Origin: Hyphochytrium catenoides | Lineage: Eukaryota; Protista; Hyphochytriomycota | NCBI GenBank assembly: GCA_900088475.1 | Contig: FLMG01000549.1 | Span: forward strand, 62,001-126,000 | DNA: 64,000 nucleotides | Direction of reading: 5' to 3' | In this document: positions 5,040-16,600 of the stretch, one piece after another | Numbering within the stretch: position 1 is the stretch's first letter | How the letters are laid out: each line of letters starts with the position of its first letter | The notes under the pieces: generated by a model | The model's input: only the letters and a program-made list of their open reading frames with translations | Databases searched by the model: none | Told to the model about the DNA's origin: nothing | Translations under genes and position numbers: made by a program

Positions 5040-8000
5040 TTATGATGCGGAGACCTCGTGGTATGCCCATGATAGCCAAGGCATCAGCGCCTCCAAATCT
5101 TCCTTCTCCACGGTGGCGCCACACCAAATCCTCAGTCCTGCAGGAGCATCACGGTATGCACCAATATCCAGTGCCACGCCTTCCTTTTCCAGTAGTGCCA
5201 CCATAGCCTTTACCTGACATTGATGGGGAAAAGTTAGCCGCTTTCCGACGCCTCGCTAGATACTAGCGAAGAACAAACACTTTGGACTAACAAATGGGAT
5301 AGAACAAACTAACCTTCTCAGGTGCCAGCTTCAAAGTCAAGCATACAGATGTGTTGGATCTCGTTGCCTGATCCTTCGCAAGGAAATCAATCCAGTCATT
5401 TTCCTGAACAAAGTTCTCCAGAACGCGGAAGTTAGCCTGACTGCGGCCAATCAGTCCATCCAAACCACCGATAGAGTCGGCCCATCGCAGTGCGTCAAGA
5501 TAGTCCTCCACACAGAGCATTGATGGGGTGTTGATCGTGCTGCCCTCAAAAATTGCACGGTCAACCTTGCCCTTTTTCACCATACGGAAGATCTTGGGAA
5601 GTGGTCTACAGGATCGATAGCAGATACAATGTAAGGGTTGGCCATGTCAATGGGTATACGATGGGGACGAGAAAAGGAAGAGAACGCGCAGATAAGAATG
5701 CAAATGAACGGCACCGGAAACATTGACAAAGCACATATTCCCTTTGCTCGTTAGGACACGCTCACGCTGTAAATCGATCAGTGTCTTTTCACTATCTCCT
5801 ACCTGGGTGGCGTGTAAGTCTCGAGTCTTTCAACCGCTTTAGGGGAGAGGATGAGCACTCCGTGTGCACCCTCTCCACCCAGAACCTTCTGCCAGCTGTA
5901 GGTGGTGACATCTACCTTAGGCCAGTCAATAGGCATAGCGAAAGCAGCGGAGGTTGCATCGTTGAAGGTCAGGCCTGTCCGATCCTCATGAATCCAGTCT
6001 GCGTTGGGAACCTTTACGCCACTGGTGGTACCGTTCCAGGTGAAGATGATATCGTGGTCCTTGTTGGTCTTCTCAAACGCGGGAAGCTCACCATAGTCCG
6101 CCTCAAGCTTGGTGACGTTCTCTAGTTTAAGCTGCGTAGAGATGTCTCCGAACCAGCCCTTTCCAAAGCTTTCCCAGTAGCAAACGTCGACAGGCTTGGC
6201 ACCAAGCATAGACCACATCGCCATCTCGAAAGCCCCAGTGTCCGAAGCCGGGACAATACCGAGAAGATAGTCCTACACATGTTGGAGACGCAACAGGATA
6301 ACAGATGGAACCAGTGAGAGGATCTCTCAAGAAAATTCGCAGTAGTTAATACGGCAACTAGACGTAGGCTTTCCAAATTTGCAGAGCTCGAGGTAGATAG
6401 ACCGAGAAGTCCAGCAACAAAAGATGGAAAGGCGTAAATAGCTCCGCTAGAGTATCTGACCTTAGGTAGCCCGAGAATGCGTTTGCTTTCCTCGATTGCC
6501 AGCTTAAGTTGGGACTTTCCAAGCTTCGACCGATGTGAGCGGCCGAGGGTCCAGTCGTTGAGCTTAGCAAGACTGTAGCCTGGACGCTTTTTGCATGGTC
6601 CAGAGCTGAACTCGGGGTTTGCCGGTCGGACGGCAGGCTTGGGGTTGACGCTTACGTAAGCAGATGCCTGAAGAGGCACATTAGAGTGCAGGTTAGCCCA
6701 GGGTACGGGAAAGACGAGAGAATGACAACTGAAGCATGCTTACAGCGGTGCCCTTCTGGTCGTTAAAGGTGTCAAGGCCAAAGTTCGCTGGCAAACTCAT
6801 TAAATGGCAGGTTCTAGGGTTGTGCACAAATGGGAGGGAGCGGATCTCATCCAAAACGTCTTCTGGCACAGGGTCATCAAGCGTAATGACACCTAGCGCC
6901 TCTCCTCCAGCACCTATGAGAAGAAGTGAGACTCTGCCACTTCCAAAGGAAATTCCTTGAAGGTGGCACTGCTAAGACGGAACTGCTCGTAGTTCTTCAG
7001 CTTTGTGTACCTGTCCTGCCGAGCTCGAATGACTCAATGTTGATGCCTGCCTTGGCGAGGATAGAGGTGACCTCTCTCAACACTCCGGGCCTGTCATCGT
7101 TTCTGAAAAGGAGCATCTCGCCCTTTGGCTGGATGTCCGTCTGTATAAGAGTGGAGAACGATGGGGAACTGTTAACATACCTGGTGAGTCAGATTCTTGC
7201 AGCCACGACCATAAAAGTTATAGACGTAATAAATAAAGGTGAAAACCGCACATAGCTATGAGAAGGTCAAGTGCGTCACTTTCAGCCCCCATGTCCAGTG
7301 CTGATGGTCGCACGGGAGAAATTGGGCATACCTTAAAATTATCAATCTGAACCAGGCGAAGTTGATCCGTCCCGTAGATAGTGCCGGAGATTCTGGTTGT
7401 TCCCTTCTCAGTTTCGAATGCGATAGTCAGCTGGTTGCTATAGTTGGCGCCCTCAACGGTTGCCTTTCTCTGCTCCTCCACAGAAAGACCCATATCCTCT
7501 GCCAGAGAGAGGGCATTTACAAAGTTTACTTCTTCCTCTAGGAGGTTCGAAAGCACGCCCTTGACTACTGAGGTGGTCAGAACCTCGGACATCTCGGGCG
7601 CGGATATGCTTTTTCCCTATAATAAGATTGAGAGAAAGAGCGATGAGATGCAGGACTGAAAGAGCTCTCTTGCATACGTGGACAGGAGGAGCATGTTCTT
7701 CCAGCAAAAAGGGCCAGTTGATGGTGTTTTGCAGAGAGGACCCTAAGATATGTCGAGTTTCGCAGCTGGACAGGAGTGTGCCCACACTTGAACGTTATTA
7801 CCTCAGCGATAATATAGATTTTCTTCAGCTTCTCTCCCCCTAGTAGCTGCGCCTGCATGCTGCCTAGCTTCTCTGCTAGCTCGAGGTAGGGCATGAGCTT
7901 GCTCCTCTTGGCGAAGTCAATATTAGGAGCGTTAACAACACCAACAAACTCCTTCCCTTCCATGGCGTTGACGAATTGCTTGGCGATATCGTGCGCAACA

Positions 8001-9778
8001 CGGACTTGAGCGTCTTTGGTGGATGCACCTAGAGTGACATGTTACCAAGAATGGGGAGACCGAGAGAGAAGCAACTGGGAGAAAACATGGATGATTGAGG
8101 AAGAAGAGGAAAGATGTTCAAAGCACTAGAAGAGGAATCATTGTAGCCCTACTTACCCAGATGAGGTGTTGCAATGATCTTAGGGTGCTGAATAAGGTCG
8201 TAGGTATCATCTGTTGGTGGTTCCACGCGATAGACATCCAGAGCAGCACCCGCCACCTACATATTGTATGGACATCAGTTGCTGCAGATGGTCTATCTTC
8301 CTTGGCATTGGCAACAATCCAAGAAGCATCTATCCTTGACTGTTCATAGCAATAACAAAATATGATGTCTACCTTCCCACTGTTTAGACCTTCCAAAAGT
8401 GCTTCCTCATCAATGACGCCTCCTCTGGCACAGTTGATAATCCTTACTCCATCCTTGCACTTGGCAAGCGAGTCCTTGTTGATTAGGTTCTTTGTATCGG
8501 CACTATGATTAACAGCCTGTTTAGCTTCTTCTTTCGATACTTATGTCTCTCAAGAAGACTTCTAAAGCACTCACCTGAGCGGTACATGAAGACTGATAAT
8601 GTCACTCTGTGCGTAGAGCTCATCAAGGGTGACAGGGGTAATGTTCGACAACTTGGAAGCAGACTCTGAAAGGATCGGATCATAGCCAATGGTGGTCATG
8701 CCAAAGGATTGGCACCACCTCGCAACCTAATCACAAAGCCAGAAAAGATATTTAGTTGACAGTCAGCTTCAATTTCCTAATTTTCTCCCTTAGAGAATTC
8801 CCGCAATGCACCATCTTCCCATATGTTCGCAATCAGGACTTACCTCGCGACCAATTCTGCCCAGACCGACGATGCCAATAGTCTTCCCGCTAAGTTGTCT
8901 ACCCATGAAGCTCTTACGATCCCACTTGCCGGCCTATTACGCAGAGAAAGTTAGTATACACAAGAACGAAAAGGCCTCCAAGCTTAAGAGCTACCTTCAC
9001 ACTAGCATCTGCCTGTGGTATGTTTCTCATAAGAGACATCATAAGGGACATGGTGAGCTCGGCTGCGGACATTGTGTTGCCACCGGGCGTATTCATGACT
9101 ATGACTCCGCTAGTAGTGCAGGAACCAAATGAAAGAACAGGGAAACGACCAACGTAAGCTGCCTGTCCAACTCTCTGAATGAAAATCTCCATGTTGCCAC
9201 TTACTGCCTAGTCGCCGCAGCCACATCAATGTTATCTGTTCCTGTGCCTGCTCTACCAATAAGCTTCAGATTGGTACCTGCCTCGATGACGTCCTTCGTC
9301 ACCTGGGTACCACTACGAGTGGAAAGAGGTCAGGTTGAGACAAATAGAAGAGCCTACGTAAATTCCCTACCTTCTAACGATAAGACCGTCGTATTCCTTG
9401 ATCTCCTTAAGCAGATCCTTAGGGTCCTTGAAAGTCTTCTGCACCACATCATGGCCGTGGGCGCCAAGTACATCCACGCAGACCTATAAGCAGAGCATTA
9501 GTGCACTTGAAACAGCAAAAGTAGATGACATTGTTCCCCCTCGCATAGCTACGAAGGAGGAAAGTGCAACAACAAGGCTGAGAAGAATACACCTGGACTA
9601 TAAGTGAAATCGGGCAGCGGAAACGGCTACGGCACGGTACCTGGTCGATAGGATCTGAGCATAAAATCCTCGCCAGGGCTGCAGTAGAAGCATGAAACTG
9701 ACGTCCCTGCGAAACTCTCAAGCTCTGCTCAATGGACTTGAGGGACAAGCGTGAGGCTAATGAAGCCGTCTTCAACAT
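5040..9778 (-). CDS. serA-serC: Bifunctional D-3-phosphoglycerate dehydrogenase (type I, ASB+ACT) - phosphoserine aminotransferase fusion with mitochondrial-type presequence; ~16 exons
   Basis: PGDH motifs [45 protein letters not shown] motif NDDRPG...GINI. An open linker runs across phase-0 intron 6668-6743 into PSAT: [44 protein letters not shown] (PLP Lys), [26 protein letters not shown]. Stop TAA at 5042-5040. Confidence 0.92.
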
Positions 9779-11296
9779 GTTTTACTATTTACTGCGCTGA
9801 TTAAAGCAGCTGAGCGATGTATTCAATCAACGGTGTCTATTGACAGTCTCCGACCGCTGCCAACAGAGGATAAGAAGCTTCACAATCTATGGAGATGGGA
9901 ATTGAGAGGATGCCCTTGCTTTGCAGGCCCGATGGAGATAGAGGAAGCAACAGAGACAATGTTCTCTTCCCTTAGTCAAGCAGGTGGGCATCCGGAAGAA
10001 AAGCTTTGCTCTTTATAGAGGCATTATTAGGGAAGGGATTGAGCCTGAGAGCGTTCTAGTAGGTTAGATGAAGGTAACTTGCGGACCAGATAGGGAGAGA
10101 CAGAGATCTGAGAGATACCAAGAAGATTCACTTACTCCGTCTCTATGACAAGGATTTACCTTCAGTAGCGAAGACAGAGAGAGCCACAAATATCAGCAAA
10201 CTGAGGTAGAACACATATAAGGTTCGCATCTAAAGGAGAGGAAGGAGGGAAGCAGCATCACGAAGCAAAGTCCTCTCGCTCTTCTGATGCTCTCTTTGAA
10301 GAGGAAAGATATGAAAGCTACAGAAGGAAGCTTTCAGTTATACTTTCCGAGTGGAGGAGTCCACCCAGCCAGAGGCCTTACTCTTCAATATTCTGGTCAG
10401 ACCGGATAAACAGGCCCACCCATCTTCTTTGAAGCAACCAGCTTAATTGCCGAGAAAATACCCAATAGAAGCCTGAAAGCTTCAGAGCGTTTATTTGAAT
10501 GTTTCAAAGCTTTCCACACACAATCGGCCTACTCTATGAACCGATGGATCCTGCGAAAAGTACTTTTCCTGTTTCTCAGAGGGGAGGTCAGAGGTGGTTG
10601 GCTCTGGTAGCTTCAACATTTAGCGGGAGCAGAGCGTGTGCGGGATGAATCATCATCATCTCAGTCCCCCACACCGCCGAGGATGGGACGATGGGCCCAG
10701 CCATTTGCAGTACAAACCTTAGGCAAATCTAGGAAACTGATCGAGCCAGTTCTAGATCCCCTCCAGTACTGGACATAGGACCATAAACTGTGCCAGAAAG
10801 ATCGCACCAGGAAACACGCCCAGCCGTCGTAACCATGACCAAGATGACCAGCCCACTGCTCCCAGCTGAAGAGCTGATGGATCCTTGAGAACACAGAACT
10901 TCAGATCTTCCCCAGGAGTTGTATCGACGTATTCCGAACAAGCGCATTGACTATCCCTGATGATTTCTTTGAGAAGTGGCAATCATAGTGCTGATCGTGG
11001 CACAGAGCAAGAAGCTGAGGTTTCCTATTGCTGAACAACAGAAAGACCATAAAGAGGATCAACACCGATGCAGCGGCGTCAGAGAGTGGAGCCAAGACTG
11101 GAGAGAATGCAGCAGGCTCCAACTTGTTGAGCGCGGCTATCGTTCTACTTTTCATAAGGGGAAGCTGAGTGTTGAAGCTTCACAGTGAGGTATCTCCTGC
11201 AACGGCACCTACTTCTTTGTCAGCATAGTGAAGTGGCTACTGCTTTATCATCTTTATAAGCCCCAGGCCTTAGGCGCTCATAGGTCATCTTCCACA
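9779..11296. promoter_or_regulatory. Divergent intergenic region, putative bidirectional promoter of the two serine-pathway genes
   Basis: Lies between ATG 9778 (- strand) and ATG 11297 (+ strand). No credible intact gene inside. Promoter function is inferred from geometry only. Confidence 0.45.
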
Positions 11297-13364
11297 ATGT
11301 TTATCAGCAAGTCACAGCGGGTTGCATCAAGGTTAGAGCCTGAAATAGCTTTTCTTTTATCTATAGCCAGTGCTTTGCTAACTAGTCCTTCGAGTTTAGT
11401 CTGCTACGTAGTGGCAAACGGCTTCAGCCCTCAGGACAGCGGGCAAACCAGTTCCATCAAAGTGCATCTTTGGCTGCTAGGATTCTCTGCAGCGATCCCA
11501 TTGAACCTGTCTGTCGTGAGGTTTTCACTGCTAGGGGCCATTCGGTAGATGAAAAGAGCAAGCTGTCTGAAGAGGAGCTATGCGGCATCATTGGCCAGTA
11601 TGATGGCCTTGTCGTCAGAAGTGGCACCAAGGTTACGCCCAGAGTCTTGGAGGCAGCCGGCAAGCTTAAGATTGTCGGTAGAGCAGGCACAGGAGTCGAC
11701 AACATTGATGTCAAAGCTGCCACCAAAAATGGGGTTCTGGTTATGAACACACCTGGAGGGAACACTCTTGCAGCGGCTGAGCTCTCTTTCTCCACACTAT
11801 GCGCTCTCTCCCGTAACATTCCAGCAGCTGTAGCATCGATGAAGCTCCGCAAGTGGGACAGAAAGAAGTACACTGGCGTAGAGCTTAATTCAAAGACAGT
11901 TGCCATTATTGGTCTAGGGAACATCGGACGGCAGGTGGCAGAATGGGCCAAGGCGTTCAACATGCGAGTGATTGGGTTTGACCCCGTCATGAGCGCTGAG
12001 GTTAGTGCGGCTATAGTGGATAGGTTACCTCTTCGTTCCAACCTTGCTTACCACCCCTCGCGTAGGATGCTGCCAAGTATGGCATCGAAAAGCTAGAACT
12101 GGACCAGATCTGGCCACAGGCTGACTTTATTAGCTTGCACACGCCCCTCAATGATGGCACTCGTGGGCTTATCAATGATGAGACCATTGCCAAATGCAAG
12201 AAAGGGGTTCGCATTGTCAACTGTGCTCGTGGAGGTAGAGTCATTTCAAGACGTCGTCCACTTCTGTTTGACAAGGTTTTTCTTCATTAATGTTCCGGTT
12301 CTTCGGCCTGCTCCGTCAAGTCGGTTGTTCTGTGGTAACAATGTTCCTTGCAAAGAGCGAAAGGATCCCTCGCTATGTCCCGCAGCCCATGGTGTGTGCT
12401 TTCCATGCCGTGACCTAACTCACTGTGACCTCTAGGTGTCGTTGATGAAGCCGCTTTACTACGGGGATTGGAGAGCGGACATGTTGCTGGAGCTGCGCTT
12501 GATGTCTATAGCCAGGAACCTCCTCCAGAGTCTCTTAAACCCTTACTGACCCATCCCAAGGTCATTTGCACCCCTCACATCGGCGCCAGCACTGTGGAAG
12601 CGCAAACCAAGGTGGCGGAGCAGATTGCCGTTCAGATTTGCGATGTCTTTGACGGAAAGGATTTCTTCGGAGTCCTTAACGCTTCGCATATGGAACTCGC
12701 CAGCAACCCCGATCTTAAGCCTTTCCTCAGCCTGGGCGAGTCTCTTGGCTCTCTGCAGGCTCAGCAAATGGACGGCGGTATCTCTAAGGTCGTAGTCTAT
12801 ACCAGTGGTGGCCGGGACATTGATATCACCACTCGCAAGGCCAGAGATGCTCTCAAGGCAGCCATTCTAAAGGGTGTTGTCGCAAACTTCATCGAGAATC
12901 CTGCCGAAGCCAATCTCATCAACTCTCCCTCGACGGCTTCGGAACTGGGCATTGAGTTCGAGTTCTCGGACCAGCTGCCGGTCGCAGTACCGCGATTGGG
13001 CGCTTATCGCAACCTATTGGCTGTCAGCGTAGTATCAAAGGAAGGCAAGAGCTCCTTCATCGCTGGCAGTGTGTTTGGTACGGAAGGAAAGGTGGTTCAA
13101 ATGGGCGACTTCAAGGAGTTCCCCATCTTCACACCTCAGGGTACCCTTCTGTCGTTCAACAACGAGGACAGACCTGGCGCGATTGGTGAGGTGCTGAAGA
13201 TTGTGAGCGATGCTAACCTTAACATCGCTAGTATGGGCGTCGGCCGCCAGGAAGGTACCAAGGCCTTGGCTTTCCTGATTCTTGATGACGAAGTTGACGA
13301 GAACACGCTGGCGAAACTCCGCCAGCTGCCAGATTTGGAGAATGTAAAGACTGCATCTTTGTAA
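11297..13364 (+). CDS. serA: Stand-alone D-3-phosphoglycerate dehydrogenase (type I, ASB+ACT) with mitochondrial-type presequence; 4 exons
   Basis: ATG 11297 plus intron 11332-11399 gives [48 protein letters not shown]. Motifs [35 protein letters not shown]; ACT NEDRPG...NLNI; stop directly after the ACT domain (KTASL*). Confidence 0.93.
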
Positions 13365-13600: not shown

Positions 13601-16600
13601 CTAAGCCAAATAGTTATAGACCTGAGGGTTGTCTTCATCTCTTTCCAGATACTCGCGCTCAATCAGACTCTCTATCCGCTTCTTCAGGTCCGCAGGCTAC
13701 AAGGGAGTAAACCGGGAGGGGAAGGAGAAAGACGGTGCATCAGACCACGTTTGAATCGCTCAAAGAGCCAAGCTTCGAAGGCCCAAGACGTGTAGAATGA
13801 CCACGATTGGTAACCGGGTGAAATCTTCGTTTTACCTTGGCTGGGAACTTTAGCTGACTGAATAGCTCTGACATGAGCATATTATGAGTCAAGGTCTTCC
13901 GCGCCTTCATCGTTCTTACTATTGCTGCATCAACCTACAGTCCTTCATCTTAGCATTTCCAGCAGGAGAGGAAGAGAATAGAGAGAACCACGTGTACGTG
14001 CAGCCATACTCTCACACGGCAGCCGTATAAGAGAAAGAGAGGTGTTCGGACGGGAGAGAGGGGAGCGCCTTCTACCTGGTACTGTCTATCCCGGAAAACT
14101 CGTTCATGAGTTTCCTCATTCTCCTCCACAGTCTCCTTGATTTGGATCTGGTTGATTTTAATCCTCATTAACTTGTTTGAAAAATCTTTGTTGAACTCAA
14201 AGCGATCACCGTCCTCCACATCTTTTCCCTGTCGAACCACCGGTCTAAGTATCGAGATCGCCATAAGGAGATGTAGAAACAGGAATCAAACAGTCTAGGG
14301 AAAGATGGAGAGGCATAATGCAGTTCTGATTGGATGGCAGCAAGGAGAGGATATCTGGTGGACCATGAGAGAGAGAAGGGGCGTCTGTCATAGAGGGTTC
14401 TCATACCCTAGGTATCTTTTGTAGCACTCTAATCTTGCCACAAGCCAGACTCTGCAATGTTCTCCTTAACTCTTTATCCTCTGATTGGTGAGCCCCGGTA
14501 AGTTCAACGATAGCAATTGATGAAAGCTACTGTTGAGAAAAGGTGGTCGTCTGACTAAAAATTACAAGGGGACGTATGATGGTGGCAGTCCGTAAAAACG
14601 GGAGGATTGAGTGCATTCCTACCTAGTCCTGTAGTCTCCTTTATATACTTGAAGTCTAACACATCTGCGTTATTGAAGCAGAGGAGAACAAGGGTCTGGT
14701 ACAGCGACACCTGAAGCTCTTTCCGGCCCTGCATGTCAAAACGTAAGGCTCTCAAACGATTCACCTGCATTCAACCCCTACAGCAAAAAAGTGTGTACCT
14801 TCGGGAAAGCAGTTTTCACCACGCACTGCCCAAGAGAGTGCTGCCAAATGAGCTGCCTGCCACTATATTTGCTCAGATAGAACTTGCGAAAGACCTCCTA
14901 TAAGGATCAAATTGGTACATCCGGTCGAGTCCAGGTCAGAATAAGCAGAACAAGCGGTTCAGCAGAAAGAAACAGGTACAGCTTACTTGGTACTGAGCCA
15001 TCTCGGAAGGAAGGTTGATCTCCAGAGCTGGATAAGGTGGCCAGTACCCCGTGGTAAGCACCTGGACGCTCATGTCTATGTTGTTACCTAGTTGCTCCAA
15101 CTGGGCCCTGCCAGATCCAGCAAAATAGAACATTATCGATTAGGTGCAAATCGGACGGCTGGTAGGATTTTCCAACCTGCTTGGAGCGTGCTGCTCAAAG
15201 GACGTCATGATATCACGCGAAAGGTCAATATCCTTGAACATGCCCTCCAACTGCCAATATACCGTGGGAAGGGATAAAAAGTGATAGAGGAAGGGATGAT
15301 GAGTGTGGCCGAAATACGATATCCCTGTGGGAGAGGACCACGTAGATGCCCAAGAGAGACAAGCTGAGCAGCATCACGCAACTTGACAACAGAGGTGAGA
15401 TACGGCAACAGAGGAGGGAAGACACCTTATTTGTGAAGGAGTTTCCGCATTCGGTTTTCAGTTTCGATATCATTGACTTCTCAGCATCAAACGATGCGCT
15501 CTTGCCTATGAAAGCAGATGAAAGAATGTAACCAACCGAGGCCTTGTAAGGATGCAGCTGAAAGACAGAAAACTGGGGTTGAGCCGTACCCAAGAGTAGC
15601 CGTTTTGCGAGGTCTTTCTTGTAGAATGCTTCAAAGACATCCTTGCCCTGTTGCGGGCCGAACAGTGAGCAGCAATCGGCGCCCGAAAAGGTAGTTCAAG
15701 GATAGATAGAGTCATGCACAGCTTCTTTTGACACCCAAGACTTCTGCGCACCTGAATGTATCGAAACAGGACCATAACCTTATCAAGAAGCCCTTCGAGT
15801 TCATCGTCACTTGTTCCTTTCTGTCCTGCCCTGAGCTTCATGTCAATAAATTTTGCAATGAGCTCAGCTGGCCGATTCTGGCGAGCGTTTATGAAGTACT
15901 CAAAGCCCTCCTAAATATAAGATAAAGGCGTTAGATATGGGTTAACAGGCAAGGTGTAAGTCCCAGGAGAAGGCCAAGTGCAAGAGGTAAGCAAGACTAG
16001 TGACTTCGACAGGGTCAAACGCAAATGGTCCCTGTTCACAATAAGAGGATGTCTGTAGGTTTGTCATTCAAAGAAGACGAATCTTCGCGTGCGTCAGAGC
16101 CGCACAGGATGGCAAGGAAGAATCCCATCACAGAAAGAACCGAACCTTTAGTGCGTAGGTGTATTTCTCGTTAAGATCGAAGGACTGCTCTAGAATCTTG
16201 TCCAACCGAGCCTTAAACTTGAGCAAGTTGTCAACCTACTCATAGTGAAAGCTTAACATTAACGTAGCGCTTGCGGACGGAAGAAGAGCATATTACCATA
16301 TCCTTTTCATTTTCTTGATCGTTGATGATCTCGAGCCCCTTCCTTCGAATATAGACATTCCATGCTGCCTTCAGCTAAAAGGAAAGTAAGAGGGTAAGAG
16401 CACTATACTGATAAATGTCATAAGAGAGAAGGATGCGCTATACGTAGAGGAGAGGGACCGATATGGAGAGCCAAAAACAGGTGGCAGTAGTGCACGGGAC
16501 AGCTGCTCACCTCCTCCAAGGCGTCGACTCTGCTGAAGAGATAGTACATCCTTTTAAGGTCTTCTTGCGCATCGCCATCCATTAAGCCATCGAAGCCCTT

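What the first reader, a model, noticed from the sequence alone, without database searches (positions are those of the whole stretch)
5040..13364. Head-to-head serine mini-cluster: a fused and an unfused PGDH share a divergent promoter (possible hetero-oligomeric complex)
Seen: two catalytically intact type I PGDH genes point away from each other 1.5 kb apart. Both catalytic domains begin ARILCSDPI; one continues into PSAT and the other stops right after ACT. Established: type I PGDH is typically a tetramer and PSAT an obligate dimer. Inference: a homotetramer of the fusion would carry four PSAT modules and could cross-link into polymers. Co-expressing an unfused subunit from the shared promoter could give a 2:2 heterotetramer with one PSAT dimer, or tune polymer formation and serine feedback. 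This is the best candidate here for an undescribed system.
Basis: partly seen in the sequence, partly recalled or inferred. Interest (0 to 1): 0.8.

Follow-up and report, generated by a model that had tools for sequence, protein, structure and literature searches.

The report
Fused and unfused PGDH gene neighbours
Two ancient copies of the first serine-pathway gene lie head to head; one is the already described stramenopile fusion with the second enzyme, and nothing shows that the two proteins form a joint complex.

Summary
Gene A (minus strand, 5040-9778, 16 exons, 966 aa) encodes a type I PGDH joined in frame to a SerC_2-type PSAT. Gene B (plus strand, 11297-13364, 4 exons, 577 aa) encodes an unfused type I PGDH. 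Their ATGs are 1518 bp apart. Spliced RNA contigs from a close relative confirm the fusion junction and most introns, and show both genes expressed in the same three samples.

The "undescribed system" reading does not hold. The mitochondrial PGDH-PSAT fusion and a co-existing unfused PGDH are published for stramenopiles (PMC5715807; bioRxiv 2026.07.27.741032). The library search returned about 100 near-full-length fused relatives.

A and B are old paralogues, 46% identical. A groups with oomycete fusions and B with ochrophyte unfused PGDHs. An AU test rejects them as sisters (p about 3e-30).

The head-to-head pairing appears in none of 11 relatives' loci or 69 metagenome loci, but no close relative's genome could be examined.

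The hetero-tetramer idea is untested. Its rationale is weak, because ACT-domain pairing should let a homotetramer close two PSAT dimers internally.

Most likely these are two known isoenzymes in a lineage-specific neighbourhood, possibly co-regulated. Low interest.

The parts
5040..9778 (-). Gene A: PGDH-PSAT fusion gene, 16 exons, 966 aa. Exons (high-low): 9778-9641, 9483-9371, 9312-9205, 9109-8995, 8933-8844, 8726-8575, 8502-8373, 8256-8157, 8028-7802, 7616-7332, 7140-7011, 6913-6744, 6667-6461, 6272-5803, 5605-5314, 5213-5040.
   Evidence: Hand-built model with no internal stop and all introns GT-AG. Ten introns were seen as spliced joints in RNA contigs of a close relative.
6744..9778 (-). 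Gene A, exons 1-12: presequence (first 36 aa, 9778-9671), type I PGDH (substrate, NAD, ASB and ACT domains) and a linker of about 25 aa.
   Evidence: Pfam hits to 2-Hacid_dh, 2-Hacid_dh_C, PGDH_inter and ACT on exon pieces. 46% identity to gene B over 555 aa.
6668..6743 (-). Intron 12 (76 nt), the fusion junction between the linker exon and the first PSAT exon. If it were retained, a stop would follow after 17 codons.
   Evidence: A joint 6666/6743 skipping 76 nt was seen in X5, X9 and X11. X9 record 10 bridges it with 167 and 77 nt on the two sides. The frame was read.
5040..6667 (-). Gene A, exons 13-16: complete SerC_2-type phosphoserine aminotransferase with no ATG of its own in its first exon.
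   Evidence: The four exon pieces cover NF002841 positions 4-385 of 389 and TIGR01365 positions 1-373 of 374. The piece scores add up to about 593 bits against a cutoff of 477. The SWQK PLP-lysine motif aligns to the 3FFR lysine.
9779..11296 (.). 1518-bp region between the two start codons. It holds both 5' UTRs and presumably both promoters.
   Evidence: No ORF longer than 84 aa, no Rfam match, no repeat or second copy in the window, and no RNA contig of the relative on 9900-11100. In the relative the 5' UTRs reach at least 92 nt (A) and about 100 nt (B) (loose ends).
11297..13364 (+). Gene B: unfused type I PGDH, 577 aa. Exons: 11297-11331, 11400-12000 (alternative acceptor gives 11412), 12066-12234, 12436-13364. 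The presequence is the first 38 aa or so (11297-11331 plus 11400-11478).
   Evidence: Model. Introns 2 and 3 appear as GT..AG joints, and the loose end at 11331 continues into 11400. Pfam and NCBIfam hits to 2-Hacid_dh, 2-Hacid_dh_C, PGDH_inter, ACT and TIGR01327.

Best explanation
The locus holds two long-separated paralogues of mitochondrial type I 3-phosphoglycerate dehydrogenase. Both belong to enzyme classes already described in stramenopiles. Gene A is the bifunctional PGDH-PSAT, one polypeptide that carries out steps 1 and 2 of the phosphorylated serine pathway. Gene B is the stand-alone PGDH that co-exists with the fusion in the oomycetes and ochrophytes named here. Shown: the gene structures, the intact domains and motifs, the spliced fusion mRNA, expression of both genes, the ancient paralogy, and the absence of this pairing in every relative available. 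Inferred: both proteins are imported into mitochondria through R-x-F-H-S type presequences, and each forms its own homo-oligomer. The fusion would be a PGDH tetramer whose paired C-terminal ACT domains each carry one closed PSAT dimer. Gene B would add PGDH capacity or a differently regulated isoenzyme. The head-to-head position is a lineage-specific neighbourhood. It may allow co-regulation from the 1.5-kb upstream region, but it is not a sign of a new system. The organism is probably a hyphochytrid-like pseudofungus, possibly Hyphochytrium catenoides (inference only).
For: Gene models and 46% identity. Domains. Fusion intron and most other introns spliced in RNA contigs that are 90-97% alike, with both genes at similar depth in X5, X9 and X11. 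About 100 near-full-length fused relatives were found, including Phytophthora, Pythium, Aphanomyces, Cafeteria and Chrysoparadoxa. An unfused clade includes Ectocarpus, Chrysoparadoxa and chrysophytes. In the careful tree, A is sister to the oomycete fusions (99/94) and B is sister to the ochrophyte unfused clade (100/100). The AU test rejects A+B as a clade, p 2.8e-30. The presequence motif is shared across both families. The literature reports mitochondrial localisation of the pathway enzymes (tagged unfused PGDH and PSP), three predicted-mitochondrial PGDH genes in P. infestans of which one is the fusion, and a knockout of the fusion. No second PGDH lies near the fused gene in 9 loci, and no fused gene lies near the unfused gene in 2 loci. 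None of the 69 metagenome loci shows the pairing.
Against: A priori, adjacency of two pathway paralogues in a genome of many thousands of genes is unlikely by chance, so selection for linkage cannot be dismissed. No genome of a close relative could be examined: the nearest proteins are about 60% (A) and 53% (B) identical. The synteny test therefore says only that the pairing is not ancient and widespread. Homo-oligomeric states are inferred, not measured. Mitochondrial targeting was judged from sequence features and orthologues, not by a predictor or an experiment.
Confidence: 0.68

Rival explanations
1. One reading: A and B are made in proportion from one bidirectional promoter and assemble into mixed PGDH tetramers, for example A2B2 with a single PSAT dimer. 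This would prevent polymerisation of the fusion or tune serine feedback.
For: The genes lie head to head 1.5 kb apart. Both have similar mitochondrial-type presequences. Both are present at similar contig depth in three RNA samples. Fused and unfused forms co-occur in the named lineages checked: oomycetes, brown algae and Chrysoparadoxa.
Against: There is no physical evidence. The paralogues are only 46% identical and split before the oomycete/ochrophyte divergence. Linkage is absent in all 11 relatives' loci that carry the same two gene classes. If stoichiometric co-production mattered, linkage would be expected to recur. The geometric need is doubtful, because PGDH tetramers pair their ACT domains (PMC6300728), so two PSAT dimers could close within a homotetramer. 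An independent fusion in the reverse order (P0068) suggests that joining the two enzymes is tolerated in either order.
Confidence: 0.1
2. The pair is a relic. The unfused stramenopile PGDH arose by an inverted partial duplication of the fused gene (presequence plus PGDH part), and only this lineage has kept the original head-to-head arrangement.
For: In both trees the unfused clade sits inside or beside a paraphyletic series of fused sequences when rooted on bacteria. The presequence motif is shared by both families. B branches at the base of the unfused clade.
Against: No other lineage keeps the arrangement (the same synteny calls). A and B share no intron positions. No non-coding inverted repeat remains; the only inverted match is the homologous coding stretch at 74%. 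The early-branching fused sequences come from unnamed organisms, and the deep nodes have only moderate support (87/52, 89/89). Neutral retention over such a time span is unlikely.
Confidence: 0.12
3. The neighbourhood is a chance result or an assembly artefact with no regulatory meaning. The two genes have independent promoters, or the contig is misjoined in the intergenic region.
For: The 1.5-kb gap is long next to the 0.4-0.6 kb 3'-3' gaps on either side. No RNA or relative's contig spans it. The finding came out of a very large scan, so a look-elsewhere effect applies.
Against: DNA runs of the same organism hold 82-97% of gene B's sampled words, and nothing repetitive in the gap would cause a misjoin. 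I did not check reads across the gap.
Confidence: 0.1

Closest known systems
Oomycete mitochondrial PGDH-PSAT fusion (Phytophthora infestans PITG_00133; Abrahamian et al. 2017, PMC5715807; knockout in Mendoza & Judelson 2026 preprint)
   Same: The domain order is the same: presequence, type I PGDH with ASB and ACT, linker, SerC_2 PSAT. The R-x-F-H-S presequence motif and the ARILCSDPI start are shared. Gene A's PGDH part is sister to the oomycete fusions (99/94). Identity over the whole protein is about 55-57%.
   Different: Gene A has 15 short introns; the Pythium, Phytophthora-like and Aphanomyces orthologue loci fetched here (L008, L078, L081) read through as single ORFs. Its upstream neighbour is an unfused PGDH. 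The linkage reported in some oomycetes is with mitochondrial PGK.
Unfused stramenopile type I PGDH (e.g. Ectocarpus siliculosus P0439, Chrysoparadoxa australica P0442, chrysophyte sequences)
   Same: It has the same four-domain type I architecture and N-terminal presequence, and a length of about 560-580 aa. Gene B falls in this clade with 100/100 support.
   Different: Gene B is the earliest branch of the clade and only 47-53% identical to its members. In Chrysoparadoxa the unfused and fused genes lie on different contigs.
Mycobacterium tuberculosis SerA1 (PDB 1YGY, 3DDN, 3DC2), by Grant's 2018 review the only complete type I PGDH structure determined
   Same: Same four domains. The catalytic Glu and His align, as do the ACT residues equivalent to Asp463 and Asn481.
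   Different: It is a bacterial homotetramer with no PSAT attached. The match is distant (E 2.5e-21 over the C-terminal 290 aa). The Tyr461 equivalent is Asn in both A and B.
Human 'serinosome' (proposed non-covalent PHGDH-PSAT1-PSPH assembly; PMC12318971, PMC10452355)
   Same: It brings PGDH and PSAT together physically, presumably to pull the unfavourable first step forward. That is the likely benefit of the covalent fusion here.
   Different: It is a non-covalent, cytosolic assembly of separate gene products, and its PSAT is of the common SerC_1 type.
PGK / PGDH-PSAT gene linkage in Phytophthora and Hyaloperonospora (PMC5715807, section 12)
   Same: It is another case of the fused gene lying next to a gene that feeds the same mitochondrial pathway, also patchy among relatives.
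   Different: The partner gene there is phosphoglycerate kinase, not a PGDH paralogue. The authors read it as a trace of joint acquisition or of a shared chromatin domain.

Membership tests
Type I D-3-phosphoglycerate dehydrogenase (TIGR01327) | Substrate-binding and NAD-binding domains of the D-2-hydroxyacid dehydrogenase fold | tested here: met
   PF00389 and PF02826 hit exon pieces of both genes. TIGR01327 scores 218 and 219 bits on the two large gene B pieces.
Type I D-3-phosphoglycerate dehydrogenase (TIGR01327) | ASB (intervening) domain followed by a C-terminal ACT domain | tested here: met
   PF19304 and PF01842 hit gene B exon 4 and gene A exons 9-11.
Type I D-3-phosphoglycerate dehydrogenase (TIGR01327) | Catalytic Arg/Glu/His and the GxGxxG NAD motif | tested here: met
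   NCARGG, ALDVY..EP, TPH[LI]GAST and GLG.IGR.VA are present in both. In gene B the Glu and His align to the M. tuberculosis Glu and His.
SerC_2-type phosphoserine aminotransferase (TIGR01365 / NF002841) | Full-length match to the family model | tested here: met
   Four exon pieces cover NF002841 positions 4-385 of 389. Their bit scores add up to about 593 against a cutoff of 477. This is a rough sum, because the spliced protein could not be submitted whole.
SerC_2-type phosphoserine aminotransferase (TIGR01365 / NF002841) | PLP-binding lysine | tested here: met
   The SWQK motif of gene A aligns with SVQK of the solved SerC 3FFR.
Stramenopile mitochondrial PGDH-PSAT fusion protein | PGDH and PSAT on one mRNA and in one reading frame, with PGDH N-terminal | tested here: met
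   The frame is open across the junction, and there is no ATG for PSAT in its first exon. Intron 12 is spliced in RNA contigs from three runs of a close relative. RNA of the window's own strain was not examined.
Stramenopile mitochondrial PGDH-PSAT fusion protein | Phylogenetic placement among the stramenopile fusions | tested here: met
   Gene A is sister to the oomycete fused clade at 99/94, inside the clade that also holds the Cafeteria and Chrysoparadoxa fusions.
Stramenopile mitochondrial PGDH-PSAT fusion protein | Mitochondrial location | not testable with these tools
   Only sequence features are available. The 36-38 aa extensions have 5-6 Lys/Arg, 0-1 acidic residues and the family-wide R-x-F-H-S motif. 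In P. infestans, fluorescent tags placed the unfused PGDH and PSP of the pathway in mitochondria.
Bidirectional-promoter gene pair | Head-to-head genes with transcription start sites less than about 1 kb apart | tested here: inconclusive
   The genes are head to head with ATGs 1518 bp apart. The 5' UTRs of the relative cut this to at most about 1.3 kb. No transcription start site is mapped.
Bidirectional-promoter gene pair | Correlated expression | tested here: inconclusive
   Both genes are present at similar contig depth in three RNA samples. Three samples of assembler depth do not make a correlation.
Hetero-oligomeric enzyme built from paralogous subunits | Physical association of the two gene products | not testable with these tools
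   No multimer prediction or biochemistry was available. Neither of the two papers in the library that name the PGDH-PSAT fusion was seen, in the passages read, to deal with its oligomeric state.
Conserved metabolic gene cluster | The same gene neighbourhood in related genomes | tested here: not met
   The pairing is absent from 9 fused-gene loci, 2 unfused-gene loci and 69 metagenome loci. All of these relatives are distant.

The most novel reading that the evidence does not exclude
The pair is kept together because the two paralogues are produced in fixed proportion from one bidirectional control region and assemble into mixed PGDH tetramers that carry fewer PSAT modules. Alternatively, or in addition, the arrangement is the surviving footprint of the inverted partial duplication that created the unfused stramenopile PGDH from the fused gene.
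Probability: 0.1. Interest if true: 0.55.

Novelty: new member of a known kind. Interest (0 to 1): 0.24.

Why it matters
If the two proteins did form a defined mixed oligomer, this would be an unusual way of setting the ratio of two catalytic activities in a fused metabolic enzyme. It would also help explain why the stramenopile lineages examined here keep an unfused PGDH beside the fusion. As the evidence stands, the locus adds one lineage, sister to the oomycetes, to the known distribution of the mitochondrial PGDH-PSAT fusion and its unfused paralogue. It also shows that both paralogues predate the split of pseudofungi and ochrophytes. That is useful for the evolutionary history of mitochondrial serine metabolism, but it does not surprise.

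Tried and rejected
- **RNA run search.** A search for RNA runs with the 5.9-kb stretch listed none. A second search with gene B alone found usable runs.
- **Submitting the spliced proteins.** They could not be given to the database tools by reference. I worked with exon pieces, with full-length relatives found through a PSAT exon, and with a profile that contained gene B's exons.
- **Gene B's last exon as a query.** The search tool's length filter limited hits to proteins of 539 aa or less, which excluded full-length eukaryotic orthologues with presequences. The top hits were short eukaryote-like fragments, followed mainly by bacterial PGDHs.
- **Metagenome scan for close relatives.** It failed once. 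On the second try it returned nothing above 58% identity, so it could not test synteny in near relatives.
- **Gene B intron 1 acceptor.** My first model (11411) was corrected to 11399 from the RNA loose end.
- **Recent tandem or inverted duplication.** Rejected: 46% identity, no shared intron positions, and the AU test.
- **Gene conversion at the 5' ends.** Rejected as the cause of the similar presequences. The DNA differs at synonymous sites, and the motif is family-wide.
- **A hidden gene, RNA or repeat in the gap.** Nothing found.
- **A wider serine cluster.** Rejected. The other ORFs scanned in the window encode a transketolase, an AAA ATPase, a kinase and others, with no PSP, SHMT or PGK among them.
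- **Structure prediction.** Not used, because a single-chain model cannot address the oligomer question.
Full report
**What is there.**
The region holds two intron-containing eukaryotic genes.
- Gene A runs on the minus strand from the ATG at 9778 to the stop at 5040. It has 16 exons, and all 15 introns are GT-AG and 58-197 nt long. The product has 966 aa.
- Gene B runs on the plus strand from the ATG at 11297 to the stop at 13364 in 4 exons.
- The two start codons are 1518 bp apart. The finding's end points are exactly the two stop codons.

**Domains.**
- Exon pieces of both genes hit the D-2-hydroxyacid dehydrogenase catalytic and NAD domains, the PGDH intervening (ASB) domain and the ACT domain.
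- Both large pieces of gene B hit the type I PGDH equivalog TIGR01327.
- The last four exons of gene A cover a SerC_2-type phosphoserine aminotransferase almost end to end: NF002841 positions 4-385 of 389, with piece scores that add up to about 593 bits against a cutoff of 477.
- Both genes keep the catalytic Arg, Glu and His motifs and the NAD motif. Gene A keeps the PLP lysine.
- The PSAT part has no ATG of its own in its first exon, and the frame stays open across the junction only when intron 12 (6743-6668) is removed.

**RNA evidence.**
I laid contigs of four runs, found with gene B alone, on 6500-12499. Three of them held spliced contigs 90-97% identical to the window, so they come from a close relative rather than the same strain. 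These were X5, of unknown library type, and two plant metatranscriptomes, X9 and X11.
- All three skip exactly the 76-nt junction intron. One contig bridges it with 167 and 77 nt on the two sides, so the fused mRNA is real.
- Ten of gene A's introns and introns 2 and 3 of gene B appear as joints.
- A loose end at 11331 continues with the sequence that starts at 11400. This moves the acceptor of gene B's intron 1 twelve bases upstream of my first model and gives a protein of 577 aa.
- No contig lies on 9900-11100.
- Gene A and gene B have similar contig depth in all three runs. That shows both are expressed in the same samples, but it is not a test of correlation.

**How the two PGDHs are related.**
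- They are 46% identical over 555 residues and share no intron position.
- Gene A is 55-60% identical to many fused proteins. Gene B is 47-53% identical to unfused PGDHs of ochrophytes.
- In a careful maximum-likelihood tree of 46 sequences rooted on bacteria, gene A's PGDH part is sister to the oomycete fusions (99/94). Gene B is sister to the whole ochrophyte unfused clade (100/100). A quick 80-row tree agrees.
- Forcing A and B together costs 104.6 log-likelihood units, and the AU test rejects it (p 2.8e-30).
- They are therefore old paralogues, not a local duplicate pair.
An R-x-F/Y-H-(A/S)-S motif followed by A(R/K)(I/V)L recurs in fused and unfused relatives alike. It looks like a mitochondrial presequence with its processing site. 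The extensions have 5-6 basic and 0-1 acidic residues.

**What is already known.**
- Abrahamian et al. 2017 (PMC5715807) described the PGDH-PSAT fusion in oomycetes and brown algae, and one in Thecamonas. They showed by fluorescent tagging that enzymes of the pathway (an unfused PGDH and PSP) sit in mitochondria. They noted that P. infestans has two further PGDH-only genes, one of which clusters with the fused PGDH domain. They assigned the PSAT part to TIGR01365.
- A 2026 preprint knocked out the fusion gene and suggests the pathway may run towards 3-phosphoglycerate.
- My library search returned about 100 near-full-length fused proteins, including Phytophthora, Pythium, Peronospora, Aphanomyces, Cafeteria, Chrysoparadoxa and a ciliate.
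- A large unfused clade includes Ectocarpus, Chrysoparadoxa, Ochromonas and Phaeomonas.
- Both gene classes, and their co-existence in one genome, are therefore not new.

**Is the pairing conserved?**
- I fetched up to 10 kb on each side, as far as each contig reached, of the fused gene in nine loci: Cafeteria, a Cafeteria-like metagenome contig, Chrysoparadoxa, Pythium oligandrum, a Phytophthora-like genome, Aphanomyces stellatus and three other metagenome contigs. I did the same for the unfused gene in two loci.
- No called gene and no tblastn hit shows a second PGDH or a PSAT beside them.
- In Chrysoparadoxa the two genes lie on different contigs.
- Of 69 metagenome loci found with gene B's exon 2, none pairs two PGDHs.
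- The only linkage reported in the literature is with mitochondrial PGK in some oomycetes.
- All these relatives are distant, so the test shows that the pairing is not ancient and general. It does not show that the pairing is absent from sister species.

**The gap.**
The 1518 bp hold no ORF above 84 aa, no Rfam family, no repeat and no second copy in the window. The relative's transcripts extend at least 92 nt upstream of A's ATG and about 100 nt upstream of B's. The start sites are therefore at most about 1.3 kb apart if the spacing is the same. A shared bidirectional promoter is possible but not shown.

**The hetero-oligomer idea.**
Nothing available here can test it. Its rationale is that a homotetramer of the fusion would polymerise through four PSAT modules.
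[quoted passage not shown] This is stated for the E. coli type II enzyme; the type I M. tuberculosis enzyme is also a tetramer.
- My inference is that each ACT pair brings two C-termini together on a two-fold axis. The two attached PSAT modules could then dimerise within the same particle, giving a closed tetramer with two PSAT dimers.
- Fusions are widespread, and an independent one in the reverse order exists (P0068). This also argues that joining the two enzymes is not structurally hazardous.
- Fused and unfused genes do co-occur in the named lineages I could check. That fits the idea, but it fits ordinary isoenzyme specialisation equally well.

**Organism.**
The evidence points to a hyphochytrid, possibly Hyphochytrium catenoides, for which 3.64 introns per gene, a mean intron length of 208 bp and early 454 data are reported (PMC5795050). 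The pointers are:
- gene A's position as sister to the oomycetes;
- the intron-rich genes with short introns;
- matches in soil and rhizosphere metagenomes;
- runs from 2011 and 2017 under one study.

This is an inference, and the verdict does not depend on it.

**Verdict.**
The genes are new members of known enzyme classes. The head-to-head neighbourhood is a lineage-specific curiosity that may allow co-regulation. The proposed mixed complex remains an untested speculation with a weak premise.

Noticed in passing
protein library hits P0068 and P0001: P0068 (937 aa) is a fusion in the reverse order, PSAT then type I PGDH. Its PGDH part groups with bacterial sequences on a long branch, so it looks like an independent fusion. 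P0001 (735 aa) is a tandem PSAT-PSAT protein.
   Followed up: partly
window 6668-6743 (-): If the 76-nt junction intron of gene A were retained, translation would stop after 17 more codons and give a PGDH-only product. Only the spliced form was seen in the relative's RNA contigs.
   Followed up: partly
window 11398-11411 (+): Gene B's intron 1 has two in-frame acceptor AGs 12 nt apart (ending at 11399 and at 11411). The relative's transcript uses the upstream one. Alternative use would add or drop four presequence residues.
   Followed up: partly
window 10901-11155 (-): This is the longest ORF in the gap (84 aa, ATG start) and has a hydrophobic stretch. No RNA contig or family match supports it, so it is probably a chance ORF.
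   Followed up: no
None is a serine-pathway gene.
   Followed up: partly
window 13950-15841 (-): ORF fragments just downstream of gene B, on the opposite strand, read by eye like a cullin gene. No family search was run on them. The first of these ORFs ends about 0.6 kb from gene B's stop, tail to tail.
   Followed up: no
L006 18699-21068 (Chrysoparadoxa australica): In Chrysoparadoxa a PALP-family (pyridoxal-phosphate enzyme) gene lies directly downstream of the fused gene, in convergent orientation. It could be a serine or cysteine metabolism neighbour.
   Followed up: no
protein P0257: A 708-aa partial PGDH-PSAT fusion is labelled as coming from a Chlamydiae metagenome-assembled genome. It may be eukaryotic contamination of the bin or a bacterial fusion.
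   Followed up: no
run X3: X3 holds 0.82 of gene B's sampled words, close to the exonic share of the stretch (about 0.84). X1, from the same sample, holds 0.97. X3 may be a cDNA run of the source organism and could give same-strain RNA evidence.
   Followed up: no
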